From the IMG/VR virus record IMGVR_UViG_3300021963_000021, positions 299,944-363,943 of that record: a stretch of 64,000 nt of DNA. One strand, given 5' to 3'. Of this stretch, positions 6,749-50,784 are shown one piece after another. The translations under genes and the position numbers were made by a program. The notes under the pieces are model-generated. The model had not been told where the DNA came from, ran no database searches, and saw nothing but the letters and a program-made list of their open reading frames with translations. The number at the start of each line of letters is the position of its first letter. Within the stretch, counting starts at the first letter, position 1.

Positions 6749-8333
6749 CGTAGTTAACGAAATAGGTTATCTTATGTGAGCCAGCTAACACAGGGTTTTT
6801 ATATTTTAGAATCATAGATTCAGAACCTGCGGTTGAGTCACTTCGGTCTACTAACGTTACTGAAAATTCCAATGCTTCAAAATCCGACGATGGTGCCACC
6901 GATGGTGGAAACGCAGCATCATCTTGTGAAACAGAGTAACTGTCGGTTAGTATAGGATCCATAAGATTATCACCTACCGTTATAGTCAGTGTGCCATATC
7001 TTGAATTACCTGTACTGAACGTCACAATATAATTTAGTATTGTCTTACGGTTCAGTGTGGAGAACATGGCTAGTGGAGTTGGGGTTATCTGTTGATACAG
7101 TGTCTGTGTGATTTCGTCATTGATATAGACATTGCCTGCGTTGAGTACTTCAGGATATGCTACTCGCTCATCGCCAATGATGACATCGGAGTAAGCATTT
7201 TGTTGTCTGTTAAATGAACAGTTTTCTACTATGTTGTTACCAGGTTGTTCAAATACCACAACACTCTGTTCTGGATTAGAAGCAAGGTTGGCGTTATTTC
7301 CGCAGTCAATGAACCTACTGGTTAAAATTTTAGTACCTGTGCCGTAGTCGGCGGTAAAAGCTCTGCCAGCTATTTCTTGGAATTCACAACCGTCAAATGT
7401 CCATTGGTTAACTTGATCAACTACACCGTTGATCTCAACGCCGCCAGTTAACACATGGAAGTGACAGGTATTGAAAGCTACTTTAGATTCATATGCGTCG
7501 ACTTGTGTAAAGTTAACTGCTCGATATGCTTTTTCAAAAGTACAGTTATCAAACTCTAAGTGATCAACTGTTGTGCCGATCTTTTCTGAATTCTCAAAAT
7601 ATACCAGTGCGTTTCCGCTGAGTGTTTGAGCTGCTGTGCCAAGGTTAGATATAGGGCCCTGGAAGGACACATATTCAAACTCACTGTTTTTGATACCAGA
7701 TAGATCTATATGACCTGTGGTAAATCTAAAACTTAAATTTCTAACTAGGATATTTGTCGGACGGTCAGAGCTTTCAAATGCTGCTTTCAGCGTACCGTCT
7801 GTGGATTGTAGTTCTACTGTTGAGCTGTTTACTAACAGTACAGATCCAAACTGTGATTCACCGTCTAGGATAGCGTATGATGGTATTCTTAGAGTTCCGG
7901 CGATTCTATAATGTCCAGTCGGTATGAACAACTGCTTGCGGAATTCTGTGCTGGTGTTTCTATATAACTGATCTAAGGCTGTTTGAAATGATTCAGTGTC
8001 GTCAGTGCTGCCGTCGCCTGTGGCGCCAAAATCTTTGACGTTAACACGATCGTCTAACTTTTGTTGTAGTGTTCTAAAAACAGAACCCGTGATGCTAGGC
8101 TCACTTCGACCCCAACGATAACTTTCGATAAGTTCTAGTAGGTTATCGTGTTCTGTTAGTACTTTGGTATTTCCAACATACGGAGACCCGTCTGCGACGG
8201 CTCCATTACCAATGTAAAGTTCTTGAGAATCTAAAGCCCAGGCAAGTTCGCCGCTGGATAGTTGCGGGATTCCTGATTCACCATTTTTTCGTCCTCTGCG
8301 GACTTGTATTTTCGATATCTGTACGACAGCCAT
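6741..8333 (-). CDS. virion structural protein with pectate-lyase-3-like beta-helix
   Basis: N-terminal QISKIQVRRG/GELAW tail-fibre-type motif; NVKDFGATGDGSTDDT beta-helix start. Confidence 0.75.
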   Translation of the reverse strand: MAVVQISKIQVRRGRKNGESGIPQLSSGELAWALDSQELYIGNGAVADGSPYVGNTKVLTEHDNLLELIESYRWGRSEPSITGSVFRTLQQKLDDRVNVKDFGATGDGSTDDTESFQTALDQLYRNTSTEFRKQLFIPTGHYRIAGTLRIPSYAILDGESQFGSVLLVNSSTVELQSTDGTLKAAFESSDRPTNILVRNLSFRFTTGHIDLSGIKNSEFEYVSFQGPISNLGTAAQTLSGNALVYFENSEKIGTTVDHLEFDNCTFEKAYRAVNFTQVDAYESKVAFNTCHFHVLTGGVEINGVVDQVNQWTFDGCEFQEIAGRAFTADYGTGTKILTSRFIDCGNNANLASNPEQSVVVFEQPGNNIVENCSFNRQQNAYSDVIIGDERVAYPEVLNAGNVYINDEITQTLYQQITPTPLAMFSTLNRKTILNYIVTFSTGNSRYGTLTITVGDNLMDPILTDSYSVSQDDAAFPPSVAPSSDFEALEFSVTLVDRSDSTAGSESMILKYKNPVLAGSHKITYFVNYGV

Positions 8334-23927: not shown

Positions 23928-26900
23928 TTAATCCCAAGCACCGCCACTTTGTTGCCAAGCACCGTCTGTAAAGATTATTGTACAGAACGCAAGGCTGTCA
24001 ACGAAACTTGCGTTGGCGCTGTTGAATATCCTAAATGGAAATAATAGCCCATCGGTTCCTGTATAACTGCCAATTCTAAAATTAGCCACACCAACAAACA
24101 CAGCATTGGGTGTTATTCCATTTTGCGGAACGAGATACATGATCTGTCCTTCAACGCCATCTGCTAGTGTATAATTACCATCTGTGAGTTTGTTGATAGA
24201 TTTAGTTAGATCTATGGCTGTGTATGCTTGTGTGACTGTAACTACACTGATGTTAGCATTATGAGATCCACTGCCGCCCATATCTGCTGAGTTCAATGTT
24301 CCAATGGTATCACCTACTACGCTGTTTCCGCTAGTACTGATTACTGTGTAAGCAGGCACACCTGATGTAACTATCACAGTAAACGACACTGGACCTAGAG
24401 TAAATGGACCATAGTTTCCATCTATCAGATCGGTCCAACCTCCAGAATCTTGTAATGTAGCGGCTGGTCCAGTATCGTTGCCTGTGCCAGTCTTAGATAC
24501 TGTGCTTTTGACTACAGCACCTGGTAATGTTGTAGTACCGCTTGGTTCAAAACTCCAAGTTTTGTTGTTGGCAACAATTTGAACTTGACCTGCTGAAATT
24601 GCTCCACCGCCAGAACGGATACGAACATCACCGCCAGTGTAGGCGCTACTATATCCGCCGTCAATATGTACGTGGCCGCCTTCGTTGTAACCATTACCGC
24701 CTGCGATGTTTACATAACCACCGTATCCTGATGATACTCCATCAGCATCGCCCGCATAGATCTTAATGTCTCCACCATTGCTATCAGCATCACCTGCCCA
24801 TAGATAAACATCACCACCTTCACCTGCGCCATTGCCGCGTTGTCCTTGGATGATTAAACGTTGTGCGTTTTGATCAGTACCAGGAGTTGGTCCAGTGATA
24901 ATTACTTGTTGACTTGCGTCACCGAACTGTAAGACTTGACCAGATTGACTGCCGCCATTGTGTAAGTTCACTGTCAGAGTTGGGAATGTTACAGAACCGT
25001 TTTGACCAAATACCCAATCATATGACGTAGTAGTATCAGAGTTGTATGTGCGTATTTTAATATACCCCTGATGATTGATATCTACAAATTGAGTATCATC
25101 ACCCAGGATCAAGTCGCCTGTGCTGTCAGTACCTTTACCTGCGGCAATGTGTATGTGCGGAGCATCCTGAGCCAGCGTTGGGTAAATGTCGATATACTGT
25201 CCGTAGTTTCTAAAACTTTGACTAATACTATTGGTATCAACGTGTGGTATTATGCTGATGCGACCATAGGAGAAGTTTTCTTCAGCGGCGCCGTTTCCTC
25301 TAATTTCGTTACCACTGAAACTGATAGTTCCAGTGGCCTCACCTGGTCTGTACAAGGTAGGTATTAGGAATTCAGAGTTGTCAACATCTGCGCCAAGAGC
25401 AGTGATACTAATAGCACCACTGATGTCACTGTCTGTTTTACCAGCATCATCTATAGTAAGATCGCTGGCTGAACTGTTTAACAGTCCTGAGAATGATGCT
25501 GGTGTATAGTCCCAGTCGCCTACAGTAAATGTAGTACCTTCGGTGTTAAACTGTGCTATCAAGGCATGTACCTGTTGTCCAGGATCACCAACTCCGCCGC
25601 CGATGGCCACGTAGCCATTCTTGACCGCGATGTTGCTGCCGCTGCCAGTGTTAGTATAGAAGCCACCGGCAAATGTCCAACTAGTAGTATTGTCTAATAG
25701 ACGTTGCCATGCTACCTGTCCATTTTCTAGATACTTGGCTACAACACAACTAAAGTCAGAGGTATCACCGTTGCCAGCGATGCCTGCTAGGTATAGATAA
25801 TCATCTGGTCCTATCGCTACACTGGTCGCCCAAGTATCACAGTTACCTACTACACGACGACTCCACTGTGCTGTACCCGAAGAATCAAACTTGACTAGAC
25901 TCATTGCGGTGTTAGTGCCGCCTTGACCGTTATCCTTTTGATATTGTCCAACTACATAGATATTACCTGCGCTGTCTATGTCAGCATCTGCTCCGTTACA
26001 GTTATATCCTGTGTCAAACAATACTGCCTTTTGCCAAGCGATAGCGCCGTTGGTGTCATACTTGACTACCAGCATACGGTCTTCTGTGTCACCAGATTCG
26101 CCTAGTTGATCCATGTAACCAATGACTACGACTTCACCGCTGGGTCCAACAGCCATACCATAGGCTTCTTCGTCGGACTGTCCATCTAAGACCCTAGCCC
26201 ATAGTATTGTTCCGTCTTCAAATAACAGTTTAATAACAGTTACTTGATCATCTGTGCCATTATAAGCATAACCAACTATAACCGCGTCTCCGTTACTGCT
26301 TATGTCAATGACACCGTTGGTGCTTGAGTATCCAAAGTCATAGACACTACTCCAATTGATAGTACCGTCAATCAGGCTTAATTGTGTTACGGTCGTTCTA
26401 TCATAGTCTCCTGATATCTTACCAGTGACATAGATCACACCGTTAGAAGAATCTACTGCTACACCCCAGCCATCTGTTGATCCAGCACCTTGATATCTGA
26501 CCTGCCATAACTTTGTGCCTGTGCTGGTAAACTTGGCCACAGAAGTATAGTTGTTGCCGCCCTGTGGATTGTAATGTACAAACAGGGCAATGATATTACC
26601 GTCACTGTCATATTCTATGCTGTTGGCGCTGCCTGGAACATCGTTATTTGTATCATTTGACTCAAATGTTGCTATCCAAACATTTTGATCTGAGGCAGTA
26701 CCGCCTGTTGGATCAGCGTAGGTCATTTCACCTGTTGTGGTATTGTAGTACACAGCCTTAGCGGTATTTTCTACGTCTTCACGAACTGGTTTAACAAACA
26801 AACCAGCACCAGTTGGATCTAAATTCTCACCTGTTGCGTTCAGTGTGATGCTGTTGTCTTCAGCAAAAGTGTATGCGGCTCTTGCGCCAATAGCGATAGC

Positions 26901-27686
26901 GTTCTCACCTTGAGGTGCTTCTGTTTCATTCCAACCTGCTTTAGCACCAATGTACACACCACCTGCTTTACTGTTGTAACCAACATCGTCGTTACCGATA
27001 GCAATAACACCCGCACGATGTGGGTCATGGATACCCTGTCCTAGACTAATGCCAGGCCCTAAATCTGTTGGACCAACATTAACACCTTGATATATTCTTA
27101 GCGTGATATCTTCATTGATGTTTAACTCATAGCGAGTGTCGCCTTCTGCTTCTGGGGTAAAATCAGTGTTGGCTTGTAATCCGTCAATACCATTAACTGA
27201 GAGTCCCACTAAGCCAGGTTCTATTTCTGTAACTGTACCGTTGATTAAAATTTCTGTGACATTTTCTACGCTAGGACCTTGACCGTTACCTACTGATATA
27301 GATCCGCCACCGATTTGACTAGTAGCATTTGAATCTTCTGGGTCTTCTGCTTCATTTTCTTCGCCTGGATTGATAACTTTGGTAGCAACAAACTTGCCGT
27401 TAACGTTGGTAAGTTTAATATTGTCAAGATAGATACTGCCGCCTGCGGTGTAAACGTGACGCCACTGTTTTGTTGGAGATCCTAAATCGTAAGTATTATC
27501 TGCGTCTGGAACAATGTTTGTCTTGGGATCGTAAATGCTGGGTAACAATGACCATATAGTTGAACCGTCACCAATTTTTAATATACCGTTAGTGGTATCG
27601 TAACCTGGTTCACCTTGCGCTAGTACTGGATCTTCTGACGCCCAGTTAGCTGCTGTGTCTCTTCTTAATTTAATCTGCGTTGCCAT
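23928..27686 (-). CDS. long tail fibre/receptor-binding protein
   Basis: Mtd-like N-terminus IKLRRDTAANWASEDPVLAQGEPGYDT; beta-propeller repeats (KYDTNGAIAWQK); Gly-rich GGxVxIxGG repeats. Confidence 0.85.
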   Translation of the reverse strand: MATQIKLRRDTAANWASEDPVLAQGEPGYDTTNGILKIGDGSTIWSLLPSIYDPKTNIVPDADNTYDLGSPTKQWRHVYTAGGSIYLDNIKLTNVNGKFVATKVINPGEENEAEDPEDSNATSQIGGGSISVGNGQGPSVENVTEILINGTVTEIEPGLVGLSVNGIDGLQANTDFTPEAEGDTRYELNINEDITLRIYQGVNVGPTDLGPGISLGQGIHDPHRAGVIAIGNDDVGYNSKAGGVYIGAKAGWNETEAPQGENAIAIGARAAYTFAEDNSITLNATGENLDPTGAGLFVKPVREDVENTAKAVYYNTTTGEMTYADPTGGTASDQNVWIATFESNDTNNDVPGSANSIEYDSDGNIIALFVHYNPQGGNNYTSVAKFTSTGTKLWQVRYQGAGSTDGWGVAVDSSNGVIYVTGKISGDYDRTTVTQLSLIDGTINWSSVYDFGYSSTNGVIDISSNGDAVIVGYAYNGTDDQVTVIKLLFEDGTILWARVLDGQSDEEAYGMAVGPSGEVVVIGYMDQLGESGDTEDRMLVVKYDTNGAIAWQKAVLFDTGYNCNGADADIDSAGNIYVVGQYQKDNGQGGTNTAMSLVKFDSSGTAQWSRRVVGNCDTWATSVAIGPDDYLYLAGIAGNGDTSDFSCVVAKYLENGQVAWQRLLDNTTSWTFAGGFYTNTGSGSNIAVKNGYVAIGGGVGDPGQQVHALIAQFNTEGTTFTVGDWDYTPASFSGLLNSSASDLTIDDAGKTDSDISGAISITALGADVDNSEFLIPTLYRPGEATGTISFSGNEIRGNGAAEENFSYGRISIIPHVDTNSISQSFRNYGQYIDIYPTLAQDAPHIHIAAGKGTDSTGDLILGDDTQFVDINHQGYIKIRTYNSDTTTSYDWVFGQNGSVTFPTLTVNLHNGGSQSGQVLQFGDASQQVIITGPTPGTDQNAQRLIIQGQRGNGAGEGGDVYLWAGDADSNGGDIKIYAGDADGVSSGYGGYVNIAGGNGYNEGGHVHIDGGYSSAYTGGDVRIRSGGGAISAGQVQIVANNKTWSFEPSGTTTLPGAVVKSTVSKTGTGNDTGPAATLQDSGGWTDLIDGNYGPFTLGPVSFTVIVTSGVPAYTVISTSGNSVVGDTIGTLNSADMGGSGSHNANISVVTVTQAYTAIDLTKSINKLTDGNYTLADGVEGQIMYLVPQNGITPNAVFVGVANFRIGSYTGTDGLLFPFRIFNSANASFVDSLAFCTIIFTDGAWQQSGGAWD

Positions 27687-28257: not shown

Positions 28258-29436
28258 ATGATTAACAAAGAACCATTTCAGAGACTGATTGATCGGCTAA
28301 AAGCTGAAGGAAAATATAGGGTTTTTAACGACATCCTGCGAGAAGCCGGAGACTATCCTTACGCTATTTGGTACGGTCCCTACAACATTAAAAAGATCGT
28401 AAATTGGTGTAGCAACGACTATCTAGGCATGGGACAGCACAAAGTTGTTCTAGATGCCATGCACACTGCGTTAGATCAAACAGGAGCAGGATCGGGCGGC
28501 ACACGCAATATCGCAGGCACTAGCCACTATCACGTTGCTCTAGAGCACGAGCTTGCTACTTTACATAAAAAGAGCGGAGCACTGTTGTTCAGTTCTGCCT
28601 ACGTTGCCAACGAGTGGACATTGATCGCCTTGGCTAAAATCATTCCCGACATAGAGTTTGTTTCAGATTCTAAGAATCATGCTAGCCTCATAGAGGGTAT
28701 GCGCCATAGCCGGGCGCCTAAACACATCTTCCGACACAATGATCTAGCAGATCTCAAAGAGAAACTAGAAACCGTCAAGGGCAAGGCCTGTGTCGTACTA
28801 GAATCTGTTTACTCTATGGACGGGGATATATCTAAACTACCAGAGATCATCAAGCTGTGTAGATTATATGCCGCTATTATCTACGTAGATGAAGTACACG
28901 CTGTAGGACTCTACGGAGAGCAAGGAGGCGGCATCATAGAAAAGCTAGAACTTGAGAACGATGTCGACATCATCAACGGCACATTGGGCAAGGCCTACGG
29001 AGTACAGGGTGGCTACATCGCTGCTGACAAATTGATCATCGATGCTGTGCGCAGTATCGCCAGCGGATTTATCTTTACAACTTCTATGAGCCCGGTGACC
29101 TGTGCGGGTGCGCTGGCTGCTGTGAAATATCTAAAACAACACGAAGAACTGCGTGTCAAGCATCAAGAGCGAGCAGCTAAATTAAAGCAGTTATTCAAAG
29201 ACAATGGCATTCCTGTTATGGATTCTGAAACGCATATCGTGCCAGTTATGGTAGGCGATGCTTTCAAATGTAAGAAGATATCAGACGAGCTGTTGAACGA
29301 GCATAACATTTATGTACAGCCTATCAACTATCCCACAGTACCAGTGGGCACTGAACGATTAAGGTTCGCTCCTACACCTTATCACACAGATGCTATGATG
29401 GAAGATCTTGTAGCTAAACTAAAGACTCTGTTATAA
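28258..29436 (+). CDS. hemA: 5-aminolevulinate synthase (C4/Shemin pathway)
   Basis: YRVFNDI, WCSNDYLGM, GAGSGGTRNI, DEVHAVGLYG, GTLGKAYG (PLP Lys), VQPINYPTV. Confidence 0.93.
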   Translation: MINKEPFQRLIDRLKAEGKYRVFNDILREAGDYPYAIWYGPYNIKKIVNWCSNDYLGMGQHKVVLDAMHTALDQTGAGSGGTRNIAGTSHYHVALEHELATLHKKSGALLFSSAYVANEWTLIALAKIIPDIEFVSDSKNHASLIEGMRHSRAPKHIFRHNDLADLKEKLETVKGKACVVLESVYSMDGDISKLPEIIKLCRLYAAIIYVDEVHAVGLYGEQGGGIIEKLELENDVDIINGTLGKAYGVQGGYIAADKLIIDAVRSIASGFIFTTSMSPVTCAGALAAVKYLKQHEELRVKHQERAAKLKQLFKDNGIPVMDSETHIVPVMVGDAFKCKKISDELLNEHNIYVQPINYPTVPVGTERLRFAPTPYHTDAMMEDLVAKLKTLL

Positions 29437-30234
29437 TCCTGGAGCTCTGCTGTAGCAGATAGGATACCAAGACATGCGTTCTTGGAATATTTCTGCCGAG
29501 TCTATCAGTTCAAGGTCTTTAAAAACTTCTATAGATTTCTCGCAGAATTCTTCATCTAGGCTCACAGAAAGATTAGGTAACAGATGTGTCTTTAACCAAA
29601 GGTAGTGCTGCTCAGGACCTGGATGGTGATCCCAGATAGTCTTGCTTTGATCTCTGAGAATGCCTATCATTCCTAGCATAGGATTCAGTTGATATATCTT
29701 TAACTGTTTGCCTTTGTATCCTAGATCATCTGTAAACTTCTGTATAGGATACAGCCAGTCTTGAGTTATGCTGTCGTAGAATCGTAGGTCATCGAAGTGT
29801 TTGTATTCGTCTTTGATATCATAGTGACTGGTAACTATGAGCTTACAGCCTGTGTTCTTTAGCAGAGCCATAGCCATATTGATAAAGTTTAGGCTGTGTA
29901 AGCAATAGCTCTTTTCACGCCAACTTTCTGTTACAAACTTACTTTCCCAAGGATTGGTATGTATGTTGCCTGAACAACGCCAGCGTGTGTTAGGCATGAT
30001 ATCTTCTGCGTGTTGATCGTATCTGTGAAAGTTAGTCCACTGGACAATAACTGTGTCTGTTGAACTAATTTGCTTTGACAGCACACATTCTGAAATACGT
30101 TCAGCTATGGCTCGATTACCTGTGCCTCGTATAGCCCAATTTTCAAATTCGTTGTAGCTACGACCTATCATGTCAGCCCAAGTGGGCCAATTCCAATCAG
30201 TGTAGCTACAACCAAATGTAAAAAGTCTACTCAT
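29431..30234 (-). CDS. SGNH-hydrolase-like protein
   Basis: FGCSYT ... GTGN ... DHHP block motifs. Confidence 0.55.
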
Positions 30235-30818
30235 GGACGTTTGTCAATGACTTGATCTACTAGACCGTAATCTAATGCTTCCTGAGCACTCATGAAATAG
30301 TCACGTTCCATGTCTGCGGCAAACTGATCATAGGTCTTGCCCTTGCTGTTATGTTTGACATAGATGTTGGTAAGGTTCTCTTTCATCTTCTGAATCTCAC
30401 GAGCTTGAATCTGGATGTCAGTGGCCTGTCCACGAGCGCCGCCACTGGGCTGATGAATCATATGTCGAGCATTGGGCAGCATAAAACGTTTGCCTGCTGC
30501 CCCTGCCTGTGCTAGCAGACTGCCCATACTACAGGCCTGGCCCATTACAAACGTAGCCACGTCACATTTGATAAACTGCATTGTATCATAGATGCTCATG
30601 CCTGCGGTAACTACACCGCCCGGACTGTTGATAAACAGTGAAATATCTTTGTCTGGGTTTTCACTTTCAAGGAACAGTAGTTGTGCCACAACCAAATTGG
30701 CCATGTGGTCTTCAACTTCTCCGTTGAGCATAACGATTCTCTCTTTGAGCAAACGGCTATAGATATCATAAGCACGTTCGCCACGTGAGCTGGACTCAAC
30801 TACCATTGGTACTAACAT
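30231..30818 (-). CDS. clpP: ATP-dependent Clp protease proteolytic subunit
   Basis: LVPMVVE, DIYSRLL, INSPGG, ACSMGS (Ser), MIHQP (His); start likely 30818. Confidence 0.96.
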
Positions 30819-30969
30819 TGTTTTATTCTCCTTGGATGATTTAACATTTATAATAGCAGACTTGTCTTTGTAGGTCAAGTGTTATTATCTATGTCAAAAA
30901 CACTTGCTCGAAGGTTAAAATGACTGTACACTTGTTTAGTTAAATACTCGTATTAAGAACGGTAAAATC

Positions 30970-36474: not shown

Positions 36475-36938
36475 AAGCACAGACACCTGCTGAAGGCATC
36501 CTAATACATAAAGATTATGGAGATGCCAAACAATACATTATCACGTGTGAATGTTGTGACGAAGGTCACAGCCATCATATTTGGGTAGAAGCCGAAGACG
36601 TTGGAGTTACTGTAACTACCTATGTAGATGTAAAGACCGACTATTGGTCAGAAAAAGTAGAACAGAGATATGATATCGACAATGAAATCTATCAGAACAT
36701 CCACTGGTATTTTGTTGGACTGTTTAATGATTGGCATCGTCGTTTTAAATTGATATGGCAGATACTGACTAAAGGTTATATCCAATATCAAGCTTCACTG
36801 ATCATGAGCCAACAGCAGGCTCTTAACTACGCCGAAACTCTTAAGAAAGCTGTAACTGATGTAGAAAAGTTTCGTGCCAGCAAAGATCCTAAAAACAAAG
36901 AAGCAGTCAAGGCCGCTCAGGAAGGAGATTGCGTATGA
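36471..36938 (+). CDS. hypothetical protein
   Basis: TTG start overlapping the ligase stop; CECCD motif. Confidence 0.65.
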   Translation: MKAQTPAEGILIHKDYGDAKQYIITCECCDEGHSHHIWVEAEDVGVTVTTYVDVKTDYWSEKVEQRYDIDNEIYQNIHWYFVGLFNDWHRRFKLIWQILTKGYIQYQASLIMSQQQALNYAETLKKAVTDVEKFRASKDPKNKEAVKAAQEGDCV

Positions 36939-37674: not shown

Positions 37675-37862
37675 TGAGTGGACGAGGAATCATCTCACAA
37701 GAAGCAGAACAAGTCTGCGAACTCTGTGGCAAGATCGATGAGTGTAGACCTTACGGTGCTAATGATGAACAAATCTGTTTTGACTGTGCTACATCTACAC
37801 CAGAAGCAACTGCTATATCAGAAAAGAAAATGGCTGCTTATATCTTTGGAGAAACAGAATGA
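37674..37862 (+). CDS. small zinc-finger protein
   Basis: CELCG...ICFDC. Confidence 0.65.
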   Translation: MSGRGIISQEAEQVCELCGKIDECRPYGANDEQICFDCATSTPEATAISEKKMAAYIFGETE

Positions 37863-38035
37863 TAAGACTTTGGTTGGTATTTGCTATCCTTGCTGTTCTT
37901 ATTCACTTTGGCATTTCAACGTGGAGAAAGATGGAAGGCAAAGAGCGTCTGTCATTGACAAAATCCATTGCCTATAGTATAATTGTTTCATTGCTAGCGT
38001 TGCTGGTAATGACCACCCTTGTTATTTTATTTTAA
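37859..38035 (+). CDS. 58 aa two-TM membrane protein (not in ORF track)
   Basis: MIRLWLVFAILAVLIHFG...IIVSLLALLVMTTLVILF; precedes the SPFH gene. Confidence 0.6.
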   Translation: MIRLWLVFAILAVLIHFGISTWRKMEGKERLSLTKSIAYSIIVSLLALLVMTTLVILF

Positions 38036-38044
38036 GGAAACATA

Positions 38045-38854
38045 ATGAAGCGTATTTTCACCCTTTCTATTCTCGCCGCCGCTGTTTTGGCAACGGGTTG
38101 TACTCGTATCGAAACTGGTGAAGTTGGCCTCCGTGTTGGTTTTGACAAGCAGGTTAAGAACGAGGAATTGCTGCCTGGTTCGTTTAATCAAACAATCATC
38201 GGTGATGTTCTTACATTCCCTGTGAAAGAAGTTGCTGTCAAAGTCGATGACATTACTCCACAAGCCAGCGACAACTCGACAATGAAAGACTTTGATTTGA
38301 CTGTTATCTATAACATCAATCCAAGTCAAATCGCTGAGATTTATAATACAAAGAATAAGAGTTTCCACGCTAATCACAATGGTGACACTTATTTGATGTA
38401 CAACTACATTTTCAATGCCGCACGTAACGCAACCTATAAAGCTGCTCGTAAGTACGAAGCGTTGAATATGGGTGATAACCGTGCTACCATGGAAGCTGAT
38501 ATCAAAGATGGCGTTACCAAAACGCTAGCCGATGAAAAGCTAGACGGTACTATCACTGTTACGCAAGTATTAATTCGTAGCATTATTCCAGCAGACAGTG
38601 TTGTTGCCAGTGCTAACGAGTTAGTTCGTGCTAAGAACGAAACCAAGCAGAAAGAAGCAGAAGTTCGTACTGCTCAACTTGAAGCACAGCGTATCCAAGC
38701 ATTGGCACAAAACGCTGGTGCTATCCAATACATGGACGCACAGGCTCGCATGAAGCAGGCAGATGCTGCTCTTAAGGTTGCCGAAGCTATCGCTAATTTC
38801 AAAGGTCAAACTTTGGTAATCGGTGCTGGTGCTAACGTAAACGTTGGCAAGTAA
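38045..38854 (+). CDS. SPFH/band 7 (prohibitin-like) lipoprotein
   Basis: Lipobox LATGC, IETGEVG, coiled-coil AEVRTAQLEAQR. Confidence 0.88.
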   Translation: MKRIFTLSILAAAVLATGCTRIETGEVGLRVGFDKQVKNEELLPGSFNQTIIGDVLTFPVKEVAVKVDDITPQASDNSTMKDFDLTVIYNINPSQIAEIYNTKNKSFHANHNGDTYLMYNYIFNAARNATYKAARKYEALNMGDNRATMEADIKDGVTKTLADEKLDGTITVTQVLIRSIIPADSVVASANELVRAKNETKQKEAEVRTAQLEAQRIQALAQNAGAIQYMDAQARMKQADAALKVAEAIANFKGQTLVIGAGANVNVGK

Positions 38855-38855
38855 T

Positions 38856-39305
38856 ATGAAGCTGTTCGGACGTAGTAGTGGATACTACCTATTCTGGACA
38901 GGCTTTGTATATTTCTGGGTGGGCATGTATCTTGCGTTCACGCAGGCTGCTCGCCCAGAAATTGCCACACTAGGATTTATACTGGCTCTTAGTGTACCGC
39001 TTTGGTGTCCGCCAGTTGCTCGTCATTTCAATATGGAGCCTTTGATGTTTGATTTTTTTAAGAAAAGAGATTATTCTAACGTAGTCAAGTTTCCAGAAGC
39101 TAAAGAAGTTCCCTACGTCGAACCTCCTAAGGAAAAAGAAAAACCTACCCATACGTACTATCGGTTAGGACTTACTGACAATAACCGTGTTAGCTTTACG
39201 ATGGGCTATAGTGAAATTACTATGAATGCCGCAGGTATTGACAGTATGATTAAACTGCTAGAAACCTATCGAGATATGTTAAACGAAGAGCATGATGGTG
39301 AGTAA
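38856..39305 (+). CDS. membrane protein
   Basis: Two N-terminal TM segments. Confidence 0.6.
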   Translation: MKLFGRSSGYYLFWTGFVYFWVGMYLAFTQAARPEIATLGFILALSVPLWCPPVARHFNMEPLMFDFFKKRDYSNVVKFPEAKEVPYVEPPKEKEKPTHTYYRLGLTDNNRVSFTMGYSEITMNAAGIDSMIKLLETYRDMLNEEHDGE

Positions 39306-39592
39306 TGCTACAACTAAGATTTGAACTAAAGAATCCTTGGTCTAAAGATCGTTTTAAGAATCTAGGCTGTGTCAGCGGACGCATTTCCAAGAATAAAGCG
39401 TGGGAATTAGAACACACATTCTATGATGGTCTCATAGCAGACTGTGAGTTTAAGTTCACGACCAAAGAAGATCATGCTGGTCTAAACATTATGATAGGTG
39501 TTCTAGGCTACGCTGTTCATTTCAGCATCTACGATACTAGACACTGGGACTACGAAAACAACTGTTGGCAAGTTTATGAAGATTTGCGCTAG
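39305..39592 (+). CDS. hypothetical protein whose TAG stop lies inside the tRNA
   Basis: 95 aa; ends GATTTGCGC-TAG, with GCGCTAG as the tRNA acceptor 5' strand. Confidence 0.7.
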   Translation: MLQLRFELKNPWSKDRFKNLGCVSGRISKNKAWELEHTFYDGLIADCEFKFTTKEDHAGLNIMIGVLGYAVHFSIYDTRHWDYENNCWQVYEDLR

Positions 39593-39660
39593 AAGCCTAA
39601 TGGTCAGGCACGGGTCTCTAAAGCCCAGGATAGCAGGTTCGATTCCTGTCTAGCGCACCA
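39586..39660 (+). tRNA. amber suppressor tRNA (anticodon CUA)
   Basis: Acceptor GCGCTAG/CTAGCGC + ACCA; D-arm GCCT/AGGC; anticodon arm GGGT-CTCTAAA-GCCC (CTA at 39618-39620); T-arm GCAGG-TTCGATT-CCTGT. Confidence 0.85.
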
Positions 39661-39666
39661 CAAATT

Positions 39667-39876
39667 ATGGAAGTGACACGCATATATGACGGAGCAGATT
39701 GTTACCCCTGGCGAGAAGTTCGTGCTTGGTGGCCAGTTAAAACAATCGGTGGCCGATACATTTGGGGCAGCAAAGTCTACAAGCGTAGATTCTGGGCAGT
39801 ATGGGGTACAGGGTTCCATATGGAGCCAGAAGTTGAGTACGCAGAACTATTTGAGATATTAAAATATGAAGATTGA
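39667..39876 (+). CDS. hypothetical protein
   Basis: AWWPVKTIGG motif similar to ORF 2529-2795 (FAWKPVKVTSG). Confidence 0.55.
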   Translation: MEVTRIYDGADCYPWREVRAWWPVKTIGGRYIWGSKVYKRRFWAVWGTGFHMEPEVEYAELFEILKYED

Positions 39877-40324
39877 AACAGCCGAAATAACTCACATCTT
39901 TCCTACAGAAGTTTGGTTTGAAAAAGACTTCATGGGAACTGTTCATATTAAGATACAACACATGGCTCCTGGTACTGAGCCATTTACCTTTGTCACTATC
40001 AACTATGACTATGCCTATACCAGCAATAGTCACCAACGAGACTTTGCTAAAAAGATTGGCGAACTACTAGGACAGCCAGATATACAAGAGCGACCCTGGG
40101 TCATGCCCGATAGCTGGAAACAGGACCTGGAAGACCTACAGGATGTTGAATGCCATTGTTATAACTGTAACAAAGATGTAAAAACTAAATCTGGGTGGCC
40201 TTTGGTTATGACGCAGATGATCGTTTGTCCCGAGTGCGGCAATAAACGTTGTCCACACGCAACCGATCACAGTCTAGAATGTAGTAAATCAAACGATCCA
40301 GGACAGCCCGGAAGTAGATACTAA
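39866..40324 (+). CDS. hypothetical protein with C-terminal Zn-finger
   Basis: CHCYNC, CPECGNKRCPHA. Confidence 0.65.
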   Translation: MKIETAEITHIFPTEVWFEKDFMGTVHIKIQHMAPGTEPFTFVTINYDYAYTSNSHQRDFAKKIGELLGQPDIQERPWVMPDSWKQDLEDLQDVECHCYNCNKDVKTKSGWPLVMTQMIVCPECGNKRCPHATDHSLECSKSNDPGQPGSRY

Positions 40325-40572
40325 TGAATGTTCTAAAGATGACTCCCGAAGAAGCACAAGCCTTTATTAGAAGAATAATGGGTCCACCTAAGCGTAGACT
40401 CGAAGGCTCAGAACATGACAAGGTATGGCTGCTGTTACAAATGACAGAACCTGTGCGTGAAACCAACAATCAACACAGCTGGTGTGCTGAATATAACATT
40501 GGAGGAATAATGTATGATGTACATTATTTCCCAAACCAAGATCCGTTCATTGAGGTGTATCTAAATGATTGA
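40324..40572 (+). CDS. hypothetical protein
   Basis: Coupled ORF. Confidence 0.55.
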   Translation: MNVLKMTPEEAQAFIRRIMGPPKRRLEGSEHDKVWLLLQMTEPVRETNNQHSWCAEYNIGGIMYDVHYFPNQDPFIEVYLND

Positions 40573-41423: not shown

Positions 41424-42146
41424 ATGATGTATGAATCAAAGCTCGCCGCGGCTATCAAAGTAAACGGCAAAGTCCTCCGTGAATTCAAGGACACAGTCTA
41501 TATTCCATTTGCCAGTGAATATAGCATTCTACTAAAAAATCTCAATACAACTAGAGCAGTGGTCAATGTGTTCATTGATGGCGAAGATATGGTGCCTGGT
41601 GGTATCGTTCTTAACGCTGGACAGGAAGTTGATCTAGAACGTTCTGTAAAAAACGGCAATCTCAACGAAGGCAACAAGTTTAAGTTCATCGAGCGTACAG
41701 GTGCTGTAGAACAGCATCGCGGAGTTAAACTAGAAGACGGTCTTGTTCGTGTAGAGTTCCAGTTTGAACAGCCGTATCGCCCAATCTGGAATACTTCTAA
41801 TATCTCAGGAGGTATCTATCCACAGGGCAGCATCTTAAGAAGCAGCGATGTTTCTTACAGCACCAACGCTTCACTGAACTCTGTGACGGCTTCTGCTACA
41901 TCTGCTACCTTCGATGCTGGCATCACTGTGCCAGGCTCAAAGAGCGAACAGAAGTTTTCTACTACCTATGTAGGCACATTAGAAAGTGTTAAACATAGCA
42001 TAGTATTCCGTCTACTAGGCGGAGAAGCTGTTAAAGAAGCTGTGACTGTTAAGCATAAACCAAAATGTGTTACCTGCGGCAAACAGAACAAAGCCACTGC
42101 CAAGTTCTGTACCGAATGTGGCACTGCTTTGGAAATATTCGCTTAA
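41424..42146 (+). CDS. hypothetical protein with C-terminal zinc ribbon
   Basis: CVTCG...FCTECG; RBS AAGGAG. Confidence 0.75.
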   Translation: MMYESKLAAAIKVNGKVLREFKDTVYIPFASEYSILLKNLNTTRAVVNVFIDGEDMVPGGIVLNAGQEVDLERSVKNGNLNEGNKFKFIERTGAVEQHRGVKLEDGLVRVEFQFEQPYRPIWNTSNISGGIYPQGSILRSSDVSYSTNASLNSVTASATSATFDAGITVPGSKSEQKFSTTYVGTLESVKHSIVFRLLGGEAVKEAVTVKHKPKCVTCGKQNKATAKFCTECGTALEIFA

Positions 42147-42153
42147 AAATCAC

Positions 42154-42192
42154 GCAGCGGGTCTTGACAGGTCCGCTGCTTTCACTTATACT
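42154..42192 (+). promoter_or_regulatory. terminator hairpin whose loop is the -35 box of the next promoter
   Basis: GCAGCGGGTC-TTGACA-GGTCCGCTGC then TTT; -10 TATACT at 42187-42192. Confidence 0.7.
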
Positions 42193-49753: not shown

Positions 49754-50014
49754 ATGACATTACCCGACGAAAGATATCGTGCTGTATCGCAGACTCGCAG
49801 GTTTCTTCTGGATCTCTGTAACCCTGAACACACGCCCAGAGTGCCTAGGCTGGTAAGGGAAACTGCTCGCAGCATGTTGAGACACTATCCCTCTGACTGG
49901 GAACTAGATCAGCTAGCTGCTGCTGCGCCTGAGCTTTTACAGCAGCGTATGGAACCTTTGTATAGGATGATCAAGCAATATGAACTGGACTCTGACCACA
50001 CAGATCCCACATAA
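49754..50014 (+). CDS. conserved phage hypothetical protein
   Basis: MTLPDERYRAV...TPRVP...LRHYP. Confidence 0.75.
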   Translation: MTLPDERYRAVSQTRRFLLDLCNPEHTPRVPRLVRETARSMLRHYPSDWELDQLAAAAPELLQQRMEPLYRMIKQYELDSDHTDPT

Positions 50015-50612
50015 GTGCGTCGTAGCTGTGTCGGGCGGTGCGGACAGCATGGCTCTGTTACACTTTGCTGCGCAGGACTCACGTAGGGAAGTCACTGCTG
50101 CTGTATACGATCACGGCACGGGTGCTCACACTAGTGCGTTTCCACTAGTAGAGGCCCTGTGTGATCGACTAGGGATTGATGTTGTAACTGCCCGGCTAGC
50201 AGCTGAGAGATCACGTGGGCAATCTAGGGAAGATCACTGGCGCCAGCAACGTTACAGATGGTTGCGCACATTGGGTCAGCCGGTGTTAACTGCTCACAAT
50301 CTAGATGATGTCGCTGAGACCTGGCTGTGGAGCACGTTACATGGTCAGCCCACATTAATGCCAGCAGAGAACCAGGCGGTGCTGCGTCCACTGTTGGCGG
50401 TCCGGCATGCGGAGCTGGCTAAGTACTGTGAGCAGCATTCAATTGACTACTGGCTGGACCCTGCGAACACAGATCACGATCAGTTCGCGAGACCCCGTGT
50501 ACGATATGTGCTCAAGCCCGCAGCAGAGTACGTCCACCCAGGATTTTTCACTGTCTTGCGCAAAAAACTGTTGACACGTCGGCAGTTAGATCATATACTA
50601 GAACACTGTTAA
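49980..50612 (+). CDS. tilS: tRNA(Ile)-lysidine synthetase, N-terminal catalytic domain only
   Basis: AVSGGADSMALL PP-loop, TAHNLDDVAET, RPLL, DPAN, R.RVR; directly upstream of tRNA-CAT. Confidence 0.9.
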   Translation: MNWTLTTQIPHKCVVAVSGGADSMALLHFAAQDSRREVTAAVYDHGTGAHTSAFPLVEALCDRLGIDVVTARLAAERSRGQSREDHWRQQRYRWLRTLGQPVLTAHNLDDVAETWLWSTLHGQPTLMPAENQAVLRPLLAVRHAELAKYCEQHSIDYWLDPANTDHDQFARPRVRYVLKPAAEYVHPGFFTVLRKKLLTRRQLDHILEHC

Positions 50613-50620
50613 GAGATAAC

Positions 50621-50697
50621 GCCCCTATAGCTCAATAGGTAAGAGCACCCGACTCATAATCGGTAGGTTCCTGGTTCAAATCCAGGTGGGGGCACCA
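50621..50697 (+). tRNA. tRNA-Ile2 (CAU, lysidine-modified)
   Basis: Cloverleaf with CCGA-CTCATAA-TCGG anticodon arm typical of ileX, CCA end, adjacent tilS. Confidence 0.88.
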
Positions 50698-50700
50698 AAT

Positions 50701-50784
50701 GCCCGCGTGGTGGAAGTGGTAGACACAAGAGACTTAAAATCTCTCGCTTATGGCGTGCCGGTTCGAGTCCGGCCGCGGGCACCA
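50701..50784 (+). tRNA. tRNA-Leu (UAA)
   Basis: AGAGA-CTTAAAA-TCTCT, long variable arm, CCA end. Confidence 0.93.

What the first reader, a model, noticed from the sequence alone, without database searches (positions are those of the whole stretch)
39586..39660. Amber-suppressor tRNA (CUA) in a phage that still uses TAG as a stop
Seen: a full cloverleaf with encoded CCA and a 7-nt loop CT-CTA-AA, so it reads UAG. By my tally only about 6 of about 100 likely genes end in TAG (882, 11690, 39592, 46348, 51985, 58907), and long conserved genes (nrdA, nrdB, ligase, hemA) are intact in code 11. Known: CUA tRNAs occur in TAG-recoded (code 15) phages. Inference: this is conditional suppression or an early stage of recoding rather than full reassignment. 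Caveats: A8 instead of U8, a C27-A43 mismatch and a U31-G39 pair suggest a weak or tuned suppressor. The charged amino acid cannot be read from the sequence.
Basis: partly seen in the sequence, partly recalled or inferred. Interest (0 to 1): 0.9.

Follow-up and report, generated by a model that had tools for sequence, protein, structure and literature searches.

The report
Conserved amber-suppressor tRNA in jumbo phage
The window carries a real tRNA that reads the UAG stop codon. It belongs to an old, well-conserved family found in many giant phages that otherwise use the normal genetic code; this kind is already reported (phage XacN1), its purpose is still unknown, and the family has an unusual loosened anticodon stem that can now be tested.

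Summary
Observation confirmed. Window 39586-39660 (+) is a full tRNA with anticodon CTA and encoded CCA (ARAGORN; Rfam tRNA 57.2 bits against a threshold of 29). A second assembly has the identical sequence.

The phage is a 364-kb jumbo phage that uses the standard code. Code-11 genes cover about 90% of the window. TAG ends 4-6 of about 104 genes. No gene is split by TAG, and 158 related loci (1.97 Mb) hold no in-frame TAG inside conserved coding alignments.

The tRNA is not a one-off. At least 40 distinct variants exist in related phages, all with CUA, U33 and A37. 16 of 20 stem pairs show compensatory changes. 60 of 73 loci carry it next to the same conserved gene. Cultured relatives XacN1 and Xoo-sp13 carry homologous copies, and XacN1's were published in 2018 with no target found. 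"Early stage of recoding" is therefore not supported: this is an old, stable state.

New here: 33 of 40 family members have a mismatch at anticodon-stem pair 31-39, against 1 of 106 other tRNAs from the same phages. The window copy has C27·A43 plus U31·G39. Published mutant work links such loosened stems to stronger or broader stop-codon reading, not weaker.

The amino acid is unresolved; Lys is most likely and Gln second. The biological purpose remains unknown.

The parts
39586..39660 (+). Amber-suppressor tRNA gene (anticodon CTA, CCA encoded)
   Evidence: ARAGORN; Rfam tRNA 57.2 bits; family model R1 86.4 bits; identical in a second assembly
39618..39620 (+). Anticodon CTA, which reads UAG, in the 7-nt loop C-U-CUA-A-A
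   Evidence: Sequence. CUA, U33 and A37 are invariant and A38 is present in 39 of 40 family members
39611..39628 (+). Anticodon arm with a loosened stem: C27·A43 mismatch at the top, three G-C pairs, U31·G39 wobble at the bottom
   Evidence: Rfam marks C·A as non-standard. In the family, 31-39 is mismatched in 33/40 against 1/106 other phage tRNAs, and 35/40 have a mismatch at one end of the stem
39305..39592 (+). Upstream 95-aa gene whose TAG stop (39590-39592) lies inside the tRNA's acceptor stem
   Evidence: Positive coding score; 40-47% identical homologues in six related loci
37955..37983 (+). Perfect sigma-70-type promoter match (TTGACA, 17 nt, TATAAT) upstream of the gene block that holds the tRNA
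   Evidence: Consensus scan, 12 of 12 matches. This is a pattern match only, and its function is inferred
38045..38854 (+). Band_7/SPFH-like gene (phrog_200), the first gene of the block; 350 relatives in IMG/VR
   Evidence: XacN1 also has a Band 7 gene about 4 kb upstream of its suppressor tRNAs
40324..40572 (+). Conserved 82-aa gene that usually follows the tRNA directly in relatives
   Evidence: 31 tblastn matches in related loci, up to 89% identity, typically starting 11-24 nt after the tRNA (L091/L092 24, L090 11, L100/L147 23; in L112 246 nt)
41424..42146 (+). Conserved 240-aa protein (beta-sandwich plus C-terminal zinc ribbon) that marks the tRNA's locus across the clade
   Evidence: 73 loci, 60 of them with a CTA tRNA, mostly 80-1500 nt upstream on the same strand. 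4828 homologues. The fold gives no translation-related match
42154..42179 (+). Strong terminator-like hairpin (11 pairs, then a T-run) closing the block
   Evidence: This is a pattern match only

Best explanation
Window 39586-39660 encodes a functional elongator-type tRNA whose CUA anticodon decodes UAG. It is one member of an old family of amber-suppressor tRNAs, kept by selection and inherited with a conserved gene block in a large clade of standard-code jumbo phages. That clade is distantly related to Xanthomonas phages XacN1 and Xoo-sp13. Shown: the gene, its cloverleaf, strict conservation of CUA/U33/A37, compensatory evolution of all four stems, linkage to one locus, standard-code use, and absence of in-frame TAG. 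Inferred: it is transcribed within the operon that runs from the promoter-like site at 37955 to the terminator-like site at 42154. It is cut out by host RNase P and 3' trimming, and needs no CCA addition. It is charged by a host synthetase, most likely LysRS (A73, U35, short variable loop, closest paralogues are tRNA-Lys), with GlnRS second. During infection it competes with release factor 1 at every UAG. Because the phage's own genes rarely end in TAG (about 4-6%), the cost to the phage is small, while host genes ending in TAG are read through. The effect is therefore global and not the decoding of a recoded gene set. The family's loosened anticodon stem (mismatch at 31-39 and/or 27-43) is a selected feature. 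By analogy with published mutants, it most likely adjusts decoding strength or range, or synthetase choice, rather than crippling the tRNA.
For: The gene is real. Family and selection: 40 distinct variants with CUA, U33 and A37 invariant, G1-C72 in 40/40 and A73 in 39/40. 16 of 20 pairs change on both sides and 93.4% of cells are paired, against 33-44% when partners are slid; 0 of 500 shuffles reach any of the five measures. Locus linkage: 56 of 73 loci by ARAGORN plus 4 more by covariance model, all on the same strand as the 240-aa gene. Standard code: 89-93% coding in code 11, and no convincing gene pair joined by TAG. In 1.97 Mb of related loci, the in-frame stops inside conserved alignments are 13 TAA, 12 TGA and 0 TAG. 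TAG makes up 4.2% of stops (68 of 1606), and no gene family larger than three members keeps a TAG stop (one three-member cluster does). Precedent and homology: XacN1 has two CUA tRNAs, the standard code and no target found (PMC5852040). Their anticodon arm is identical to that of L091 (its loop and the central stem pairs recur in many members), including C31·A39. Hallmark: 31-39 is mismatched in 33/40 against 1/106 controls, Fisher p about 1e-24, and 35/40 have a mismatch at an end of the stem. Xoo-sp13, BUCT-ZZ01 and Summit suppressors each have one too. Identity lead: XacN1's suppressors are closest to its own tRNA-Lys(UUU) and to roseophage tRNA-Lys(CUU). LysRS and GlnRS are the two synthetases shown to charge the heterologous amber suppressor tested in E. 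coli, and pair 31-39 shifts the balance between them (PMC1483225).
Against: No expression, charging or read-through data exist for any member. The window tRNA has no clearly closest isotype among the phage tRNAs: the best are Met(CAT), Arg and Lys at about 72-75% identity. The only cellular 3'-half match is a tRNA-Arg(CCG), which is probably chance. The genome carries no signature of strong read-through. Back-up stops after TAG are not enriched (23.5% within 3 codons, against 22-26% after TAA and TGA), and the base after TAG is not biased. About 13 of 73 loci lack the tRNA (about 3-4 of them have under 1.4 kb of upstream sequence), so it is dispensable in some lineages. Only about 92 kb of the 364-kb genome, plus two neighbourhoods in relatives, were examined. 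A few TAG-containing genes elsewhere cannot be excluded. A8 in place of the near-universal U8 could lower stability.
Confidence: 0.7

Rival explanations
1. Selective recoding or programmed read-through. The tRNA exists to decode one or a few specific phage UAG codons, either an in-frame TAG in an essential or late gene or a TAG stop with a functional C-terminal extension, located outside the regions examined.
For: Strict conservation of CUA across the clade implies that UAG reading matters to the phage. Only about a quarter of this genome was seen. In recoded phages, in-frame stops concentrate in late and lysis genes (bioRxiv 10.1101/2021.08.26.457843).
Against: No in-frame TAG in conserved alignments across 1.97 Mb of 158 loci, while 25 TAA/TGA cases were detectable by the same test. 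No gene family larger than three members keeps a TAG stop. The structural genes in the window are intact. The XacN1 authors read through all 18 amber stops of a complete genome and found no added similarity (PMC5852040). In the window, the read-through extensions of the four securely called TAG-ending genes are 0-49 codons long and run into other stops or other frames.
Confidence: 0.15
2. Transitional state on the way to full TAG reassignment (code 15).
For: A CUA tRNA together with rare TAG stops (4-6%) is the pre-condition proposed for recoding; depletion of a stop codon in standard-code relatives of recoded phages was reported.
Against: The state is shared by a deep clade and by XacN1 and Xoo-sp13, and no recoded member was found among 158 loci. 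TAG stops are gained and lost freely among orthologues, as ordinary stops are. No RF2 or dedicated synthetase gene appears in the roughly 92 kb seen.
Confidence: 0.07
3. The tRNA's main role is not translation of UAG. It could be an RNA-processing punctuation mark in the operon, a decoy for a host anticodon nuclease or other tRNA-targeting defence, or a decaying pseudogene.
For: It is embedded between protein genes on one strand, and the upstream gene's stop codon lies inside it. It has unusual core features: A8 or G8 in 21/40, and a mismatched anticodon stem. Some lineages have lost it.
Against: A processing signal or a pseudogene would not keep C34-U35-A36, U33 and A37 invariant while every stem co-varies. 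The acceptor end, T-loop and G18G19 are intact. A nuclease decoy would be expected to mimic a sense anticodon loop that hosts target, and no such target with CUA is known to me (own knowledge).
Confidence: 0.05
4. It is tRNA-Pyl, as the ARAGORN label says, inserting pyrrolysine.
For: Anticodon CUA.
Against: It has a standard 7-nt D-loop with G18G19, a TTCGA T-loop, a 5-position (effectively shorter) anticodon stem and a 5-nt variable loop. From my own knowledge, tRNA-Pyl has a 6-bp anticodon stem, a 3-nt variable loop, a tiny D-loop and no G18G19/T-psi-C. No pylS or pylBCD-like domain turned up in the Pfam, NCBIfam and PHROGs scans of window genes or in the contig gene tables.
Confidence: 0.01

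Closest known systems
tRNA-Sup(CUA) genes of Xanthomonas jumbo phage XacN1 (AP018399, 36047-36122 and 36130-36205; Yoshikawa et al. 2018, PMC5852040), and the unannotated copy in Xoo-sp13
   Same: A jumbo myovirus-type genome with the standard code, few amber stops (18 of 592 genes in XacN1) and no identifiable target. The XacN1 anticodon arm is the same as in many members of this family, including C31·A39 and A27·C43. Both have a short variable loop and an encoded CCA. The phages also share the 240-aa zinc-ribbon protein (35-39% identity) and a Band 7 gene near the tRNA.
   Different: The XacN1 copies have different acceptor stems (one has G73). They are duplicated and sit in the terminal repeats among a 26-tRNA set, not beside the 240-aa gene. 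The window copy has U31·G39 rather than C·A, and A8.
Suppressor tRNAs of TAG-recoded (code 15) phages: crAss-like, Lak and other gut phages (Borges et al., bioRxiv 10.1101/2021.08.26.457843; PMC9523058)
   Same: A phage-encoded CUA tRNA, presumably charged by a host synthetase, active in a host that uses the standard code.
   Different: Those phages have many in-frame TAG codons (read as Gln), low code-11 coding density and often RF2. Here coding density is about 90% in code 11, there is no in-frame TAG, and TAG ends genes.
tRNAs with 4-bp ('unpinned') anticodon stems: Blastocrithidia-like tRNA-Trp(CCA), E. coli Su7-CUA 27-43 mutants, tRNA-Thr2-CUA with G27·A43 (PMC13092985 and the Schultz and Yarus 1994 papers cited there); yeast sup70-65 with A31·C39 (PMC3664417)
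   Same: C34, and a terminal anticodon-stem pair that is not Watson-Crick: the top pair in the window copy, the bottom pair in most of the family. In the published cases this raises read-through or lets C34 pair with A (UGA or UAA), or relaxes first-codon-base reading.
   Different: The published cases are sense tRNAs or laboratory mutants. Here the feature is natural, conserved across a family of cognate UAG readers, and mostly at the bottom pair (31-39), which the 2026 survey set aside as unstudied. No decoding data exist for these tRNAs.
Classical E. coli and T4 amber suppressors (supE, supF, supD; T4 psu1+)
   Same: A cognate CUA anticodon in a loop with A37 and A38. From my own knowledge, A36-A37-A38 is the context that MiaA modifies.
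   Different: Those are single-step laboratory mutants of sense tRNAs with normal stems. This one is a wild-type, anciently conserved gene with no recognisable sense-tRNA parent.

Membership tests
Canonical elongator tRNA (Rfam RF00005) | Covariance-model score above the curated threshold over the full model | tested here: met
   57.2 bits against a threshold of 29, model positions 1-71 of 71
Canonical elongator tRNA (Rfam RF00005) | Cloverleaf kept by compensatory changes in homologues | tested here: met
   16 of 20 pairs change on both sides; covariation score 0.527 against 0.07-0.12 with slid partners
Canonical elongator tRNA (Rfam RF00005) | Universal core bases U8, G18G19, U33, T54-psi55-C56 | tested here: inconclusive
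   G18G19, U33 and TTCGA are present. Position 8 is A here, and A or G in 21 of 40 family members against 12 of 106 other phage tRNAs
Amber suppressor tRNA | Anticodon CUA at positions 34-36 of a 7-nt loop with U33 and a purine at 37 | tested here: met
   C-U-CUA-A-A; invariant in 40 variants
Amber suppressor tRNA | Aminoacylation and actual UAG read-through | not testable with these tools
   Needs a reporter assay and mass spectrometry
XacN1-type suppressor tRNA of standard-code jumbo phages | Sequence homology to the XacN1 tRNA-Sup genes | tested here: met
   The XacN1 anticodon arm is identical to that of L091 and differs by one or two stem bases from other family members, and the T arm is shared with family members. 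The XacN1 copies align with the family in A3, though they were used to build model R1 and so are not an independent test of it. The window copy itself differs in the arm's stem bases
XacN1-type suppressor tRNA of standard-code jumbo phages | Host phage uses the standard code with TAG as a stop | tested here: met
Code-15 (TAG to Gln) recoded phage system | In-frame TAG at sense positions of conserved genes | tested here: not met
   0 TAG among 25 in-frame stops in conserved alignments over 1.97 Mb; no split genes in the window
Code-15 (TAG to Gln) recoded phage system | Low coding density under code 11 | tested here: not met
   89-93% coding under code 11
Code-15 (TAG to Gln) recoded phage system | Phage-encoded RF2 or a dedicated synthetase | tested here: inconclusive
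   None found among the larger window ORFs scanned or in the gene tables of about 28 kb more of the contig. About 270 kb of the genome was not seen
tRNA-Pyl | 6-bp anticodon stem, 3-nt variable loop, reduced D-loop without G18G19 (own knowledge of the family) | tested here: not met
   Standard D-loop and T-loop, 5-nt variable loop, and an anticodon stem of 5 positions or fewer
4-bp anticodon-stem ('unpinned') tRNAs with C34 | Terminal anticodon-stem pair (27-43 or 31-39) not Watson-Crick, with C at position 34 | tested here: met
   Window: C27·A43 and U31·G39. Family: 35 of 40 have a terminal mismatch
4-bp anticodon-stem ('unpinned') tRNAs with C34 | Expanded or enhanced decoding (C34:A pairing, higher read-through) | not testable with these tools
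   The genome shows no excess of back-up stops after TAA or TAG, which argues against very strong UAA reading but does not measure it

The most novel reading that the evidence does not exclude
The conserved loosening of the anticodon stem is an adaptive design that makes these phage tRNAs unusually effective or broad stop-codon readers. The stem has an A·C, C·A or C·C mismatch at 31-39 in 33 of 40 members, against 1 of 106 other tRNAs of the same phages, and a 27-43 mismatch in the window copy, Summit and BUCT-ZZ01. Such tRNAs could out-compete RF1 at UAG and might also read UAA through C34:A pairing. On this reading the phage uses the tRNA as a host-takeover or anti-defence weapon that corrupts termination of host (or rival phage) genes, while its own TAG-poor genome is largely spared. 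This would be the first natural case of the 'unpinned stem' principle applied to a cognate suppressor, and it would explain why standard-code phages keep suppressor tRNAs.
Probability: 0.25. Interest if true: 0.85.

Novelty: new member of a known kind. Interest (0 to 1): 0.55.

Why it matters
Suppressor tRNAs in phages that do not use an altered code have been noted several times (XacN1, RsoM2USA, Summit), each time with the remark that no target could be found. This window shows that the phenomenon is not sporadic. One such tRNA family is old, under clear purifying selection, tied to a fixed locus, and widespread in environmental jumbo phages. Reading UAG therefore has value to a standard-code phage.

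The family also gives that puzzle a concrete handle: a statistically overwhelming structural hallmark, the mismatched 31-39 or 27-43 pair. Published mutant studies connect that hallmark to altered stop-codon decoding and to the choice between lysyl- and glutaminyl-tRNA synthetase. This turns 'why do these phages carry suppressors?' into a set of simple reporter experiments.

There are two practical consequences. Annotation pipelines label these genes 'tRNA-Pyl' or miss them altogether: ARAGORN missed four family members, and Xoo-sp13 and BUCT-ZZ01 carry unannotated copies. And the presence of a CUA tRNA alone should not be taken as evidence of code 15.

Tried and rejected
1. Nucleotide searches of the tRNA and its 4-kb surroundings against 50,697 phage records found nothing. 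Relatives had to be reached through proteins and exact patterns.

2. I looked for the parent isotype in three ways.
- Pairwise comparison with 50 phage tRNAs gave no clear winner: Met(CAT), Arg(TCT), Lys(TTT) and Leu(TAA) all fall at 70-76%.
It shares the acceptor stem and T arm but not the D arm or anticodon arm. I treat it as chance among millions of tRNA genes.
- Model R1 scores sense tRNAs (Met-CAT 55.7 bits, Trp-CCA 54.1 bits) far below family members.

3. I first compared TAG use in loci 'with' and 'without' the tRNA (9.1% against 6.5%). I dropped this as uninformative once it became clear that the tRNA travels with a different gene, so the 'without' contigs probably carry it elsewhere.

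4. I tested whether the linked 240-aa gene explains the tRNA, for example as a synthetase, release factor or tRNA enzyme. Pfam finds only a zinc ribbon. The AlphaFold model (pLDDT 61) has an Ig-like beta-sandwich with no significant PDB match, and resembles only uncharacterised giant-virus and iridovirus proteins. No functional link was found, and the linkage looks positional.

5. I considered that the TilS-like enzyme at 49980-50612 might convert C34 of the CUA tRNA to lysidine and so redirect it to UAA. I rejected this as the primary reading, because the enzyme sits directly before a tRNA(CAT), its natural substrate type, and because TAA is the phage's main stop.

6. I walked the contig upstream with three look-ups. 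This gave chaperone, S21 and pigment genes but no RF or synthetase. I stopped because each step adds only about 10 kb.

7. An in-frame-stop screen without a coding filter was swamped by antisense ORFs of conserved genes. It was redone with queries filtered by codon usage.
Full report
**1. The observation**

ARAGORN finds three tRNA genes in the window. One lies at 39586-39660 (+) and has anticodon cta. The 'tRNA-Pyl' label only reflects that anticodon. Rfam's tRNA model matches it end to end at 57.2 bits (threshold 29) and flags a single non-standard pair, the first pair of the anticodon stem.

Read from the sequence, the gene has these features:
- a G1-C72 acceptor stem of seven pairs, with A73 and an encoded CCA;
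- A8, a 4-bp D stem and a 7-nt D loop with GG;
- an anticodon arm with C27·A43, three G-C pairs and U31·G39;
- the loop C-U-CUA-A-A, with CTA at 39618-39620;
- a 5-nt variable loop and a normal TTCGA T loop.

The minimum-energy fold is the cloverleaf, with z = -2.5 against shuffles. An independent ENA assembly of the same phage is identical over the tRNA and 45 flanking bases.

**2. The genome and its code**

An exact-pattern scan places the window at the last 64 kb of IMG/VR contig 3300021963_000021, which is 363,943 bp. The phage is therefore a jumbo phage.

Recognisable genes in the window and just upstream include:
- ribonucleotide reductase, both subunits;
- ATP-dependent DNA ligase;
- 5-aminolevulinate synthase (TIGR01821, 575 bits);
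- ClpP, TerC, a MoxR/VWA pair and HNH endonucleases;
- long Mtd_N-headed fibre-type proteins;
- upstream of the window: S21, DnaK, Hsp20, ClpS, heme oxygenase and a bilin reductase.

A structural protein is 39% identical to proteins of the 180-214-kb Synechococcus phages S-B05, S-B43 and S-T4.

Under code 11 a greedy ORF map covers 93% of the window. A map filtered by a codon-usage score trained on 22 long genes gives 104 genes and 89% coverage, with stops TAA 59, TGA 41 and TAG 4. Two more TAG ORFs remain ambiguous.

I treated TAG as a sense codon and looked for ORF pairs that fuse into one gene. The hits were almost entirely antisense or off-frame shadows of real genes; a few (for example 37678-38121) were not followed up individually, and none joined two coding-positive ORFs. 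The phage uses the standard code in this 64 kb, and its structural genes are included in that.

**3. The tRNA is not a one-off**

The Band_7-like gene at 38045-38854 has 350 relatives in IMG/VR. Among the 80 loci fetched, only the window's own contig and one other lineage had a CTA tRNA nearby. A 31-nt pattern from the shared 3' half found further contigs. Together these gave three sequence variants with the same acceptor stem and T arm but co-varying D and anticodon stems.

What travels with the tRNA is the 240-aa gene at 41424-42146. Searching with that protein returned 73 loci. ARAGORN finds a CTA tRNA in 56 of them. All are on the gene's strand, usually 80-1500 nt upstream and most often 327 nt. 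A covariance model built from the family recovers four more that ARAGORN missed, giving 60 of 73. Several of the rest are truncated upstream.

The local gene order is conserved: an AAA ATPase or a 172-aa gene, then the tRNA, an 82-aa gene, the 240-aa gene, a 180-aa gene and a 179-aa gene, all on one strand.

In the window, a perfect sigma-70-type promoter match at 37955-37983 and a strong terminator-like hairpin at 42154-42179 bracket the block. These are pattern matches only. Co-transcription and excision of the tRNA by RNase P are inferred.

**4. Selection on the tRNA**

An alignment of 40 distinct variants, including the two XacN1 copies, shows the following:
- CUA, U33 and A37 are invariant;
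- A38 and A73 are each present in 39 of 40;
- G1-C72 is present in 40 of 40 and C2-G71 in 39 of 40.

16 of 20 cloverleaf pairs change on both sides while staying paired. 93.4% of cells are standard pairs, against 33-44% when partners are slid by 1-3 columns. None of 500 shuffles reaches any of the five observed measures. This is the signature of a working tRNA whose UAG-reading anticodon is itself under selection. It rules out a pseudogene or a mere processing signal.

**5. No sign of recoding or of a target**

I took 2,157 ORFs of at least 100 aa that passed a coding-potential filter, drawn from 158 loci (1.97 Mb). I aligned them by tblastn against all the loci and counted in-frame stops flanked on both sides by at least 25 aligned residues. 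There were 25: 13 TAA, 12 TGA and no TAG.

TAG ends 68 of 1,606 non-redundant genes, or 4.2%. In gene families, TAG stops are scattered singletons that alternate with TAA and TGA. Only one three-member cluster has TAG throughout. Back-up stops within three codons are no more frequent after TAG (23.5%) than after TAA (22%) or TGA (26%), and the base after TAG is unremarkable.

In the window, read-through of the four securely called TAG-ending genes would add 0, 21, 27 and 49 codons; the two ambiguous ones were not computed.

The limit of this evidence is coverage. Only about 92 kb of this genome, and two neighbourhoods in relatives, were sampled.

**6. What is already known**

The 240-aa protein has homologues at 35-39% identity in the cultured jumbo phages XacN1, Xoo-sp13, CM1 and RAS14.

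The XacN1 paper reports two CUA suppressor tRNAs per terminal repeat, the standard code and 18 amber stops. In-silico read-through revealed no target (PMC5852040). RsoM2USA and the siphophage Summit are described in the same way (PMC8504454; PMC9022506).

The XacN1 genes share their anticodon arm base for base with L091, and all but one or two stem bases with many other members of the present family. Xoo-sp13 and the cyanophage BUCT-ZZ01, whose host is Synechococcus elongatus PCC 7942, carry unannotated CUA tRNAs.

This window adds a new member and shows how widespread and old the family is.

Because the state is shared across such depth without any recoded member, 'an early stage of recoding' is not supported. 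Depletion of a stop codon was proposed as a precursor to recoding (bioRxiv 10.1101/2021.08.26.457843). Here it looks like a stable equilibrium instead.

**7. The hallmark**

| Pair 31-39 | Count |
|---|---|
| C·A | 20 |
| A·C | 9 |
| U·G | 4 |
| C·C | 3 |
| alignment gap at position 39 (L044; C·C when read from the sequence) | 1 |
| Watson-Crick | 3 |

Among 106 other tRNAs from the same loci and from XacN1, the same pair is Watson-Crick in 101, G·U in 4 and mismatched in 1. Fisher's test gives p of about 1e-24.

Counting the top pair 27-43 as well, 35 of 40 suppressors have a terminal mismatch and only 2 are Watson-Crick at both ends. The window copy has C27·A43 and U31·G39. Summit has C27·A43, BUCT-ZZ01 has A27·G43 and Xoo-sp13 has C31·A39. 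U8 is replaced by A or G in 21 of 40, against 12 of 106.

The swap between C·A and A·C suggests that a particular non-canonical geometry is kept, or that pairing is deliberately absent.

Published work bears on this:
- Mismatches at 27-43 in an E. coli CUA suppressor allowed reading of UAA through C34:A pairing.
- A natural G27·A43 made tRNA-Thr2-CUA a better amber suppressor.
[quoted passage not shown] These three results are summarised in PMC13092985, which cites Schultz and Yarus 1994.
- The yeast sup70-65 mutation creates exactly an A31·C39 mismatch and relaxes decoding, at some cost in stability and charging (PMC3664417).
- Pair 31-39 shifts a heterologous amber suppressor between LysRS and GlnRS (PMC1483225).

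The irregularities are tuned, that is selected. But the precedents point towards stronger or broader decoding, or a choice of synthetase, rather than weakness. I found no report of this hallmark in phage suppressors, though my literature search was limited to the held library.

**8. Which amino acid**

I worked by elimination from identity rules (own knowledge; a review was listed):
- No long variable arm, so not Ser, Leu or bacterial Tyr.
- G3-C70, so not Ala.
- No G-1, so not His.
- A73 with G1-C72 and C2-G71, which argues against bacterial Trp and Gln, both of which use G73.
- U35 with A73 fits LysRS.

The loop is one base change away from tRNA-Lys(CUU). XacN1's suppressors are closest to its own tRNA-Lys(UUU), with which they share the T arm and nearly the whole D arm, and to roseophage tRNA-Lys(CUU). 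GlnRS is the known alternative for CUA anticodons.

My estimate is Lys about 45%, Gln about 25% and other about 30%. For the window copy itself, no closest isotype emerges.

**9. Mechanism and purpose**

The most likely mechanism has three steps. The tRNA is made from the operon transcript. It is charged by a host enzyme. It then competes with RF1 at all UAG codons during infection.

The phage's own exposure is small, since 4-6% of its genes end in TAG and the added tails would be short. Any benefit therefore probably comes from effects on host or competitor gene expression, or from a target not yet seen. This last step is inference, and I hold it with low confidence.

Rivals, in order: a specific read-through or in-frame TAG target elsewhere in the genome (0.15), a transitional recoding state (0.07), a non-decoding role (0.05), and tRNA-Pyl (0.01).

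**10. Verdict**

The tRNA is a new member of a known but unexplained kind.

The value of the finding lies in two things: the demonstration that this is a large, old, selected family, and the loosened-stem hallmark, which makes the open question experimentally approachable.

Noticed in passing
window 49980-50784: A 210-aa TilS N-terminal-domain protein (lysidine synthase; TIGR02432, 105 bits against a cut-off of 93.6; PF01171) ends 8 nt before a tRNA(CAT) at 50621-50697, which is followed by tRNA-Leu(TAA). The 'tRNA-Met' is therefore probably a tRNA-Ile2 that the phage's own enzyme converts to read AUA.
   Followed up: partly
window 39590-39592: The TAG stop of the real 95-aa gene 39305-39592 lies inside the suppressor tRNA, at acceptor-stem positions 5-7. 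RNase P cleavage at the tRNA's 5' end would remove that gene's stop codon and leave a non-stop mRNA. Read-through would run 27 codons across the whole tRNA to TGA at 39674-39676.
   Followed up: partly
window 28258-29436; L167 13406-14615: The phage encodes 5-aminolevulinate synthase (TIGR01821, 575 bits). About 25 kb upstream in the same contig it also encodes heme oxygenase and a ferredoxin-dependent bilin reductase. This is a tetrapyrrole/bilin gene set of the kind seen in cyanophages.
   Followed up: no
L165 18325-18573; L167 10370-13125; window 30231-30878: The contig encodes ribosomal protein S21, DnaK/Hsp70, Hsp20, ClpS and ClpP, and also CsgF/CsgG-like, FecR-like and autotransporter-domain proteins.
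   Followed up: no
window 41424-42146: The 240-aa protein is very widespread (4828 homologues, many 75-88% identical). It has an N-terminal Ig-like beta-sandwich, a disordered middle and a C-terminal CxxC...CxxC zinc ribbon. The predicted fold matches only uncharacterised proteins of giant viruses, nudiviruses and iridoviruses, including the 'immediate early protein ICP-18'. In XacN1 it lies next to the tail sheath gene.
   Followed up: partly
L020 4694-5054; L044 4921-5323; L047 4644-5019; L048 1598-1970; L056 2033-2428; L062 2840-3210: Several related jumbo phages encode their own tmRNA. The tags are ANDELFAIAA, ANDESFRIAA, ANDTQFALAA, ANDESYALAA, and a long one, ANASTFEYFTVEGFTADNGLVAA. Some also carry arrays of 20 or more tRNAs.
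   Followed up: no
L169 294-369 (Xoo-sp13, MN047793 about 36791-36866); L170 294-369 (BUCT-ZZ01, ON615601): Two cultured phages carry CUA suppressor tRNAs that their GenBank records do not annotate. One is a T4-like cyanophage of the laboratory strain Synechococcus elongatus PCC 7942.
   Followed up: partly
L161 4102-4176; L129, L152 and L154 2732-2805: ARAGORN missed four CUA family members that the covariance model found, at 80.7 and 59.5 bits. The latter three have G73 and a weaker D stem.
   Followed up: partly
L151 5400-5516: A tRNA-like sequence with a normal acceptor stem, D arm and T arm, but an insertion of about 42 nt in the anticodon region. It lies about 110 nt upstream of a tRNA(CAT), at the position where other phages have the CUA tRNA. 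It may be an intron-bearing or disrupted tRNA.
   Followed up: no
L057 3039; L029 1246; L038 6243; L044 8994 and others: 25 in-frame TAA or TGA codons lie inside otherwise conserved coding alignments in related loci. One TGA aligns to Trp in seven loci, six of them near-identical contigs of the L044 lineage plus L008. They may be pseudogenes, sequencing errors or alignment artefacts.
   Followed up: no
window 23928-27686 and 6741-8333: Two large proteins begin with an Mtd_N (major tropism determinant N-terminal) domain. One is 1252 aa. The other, 530 aa, also has a pectate-lyase-like beta-helix. They are likely receptor-binding fibre or depolymerase proteins.
   Followed up: no
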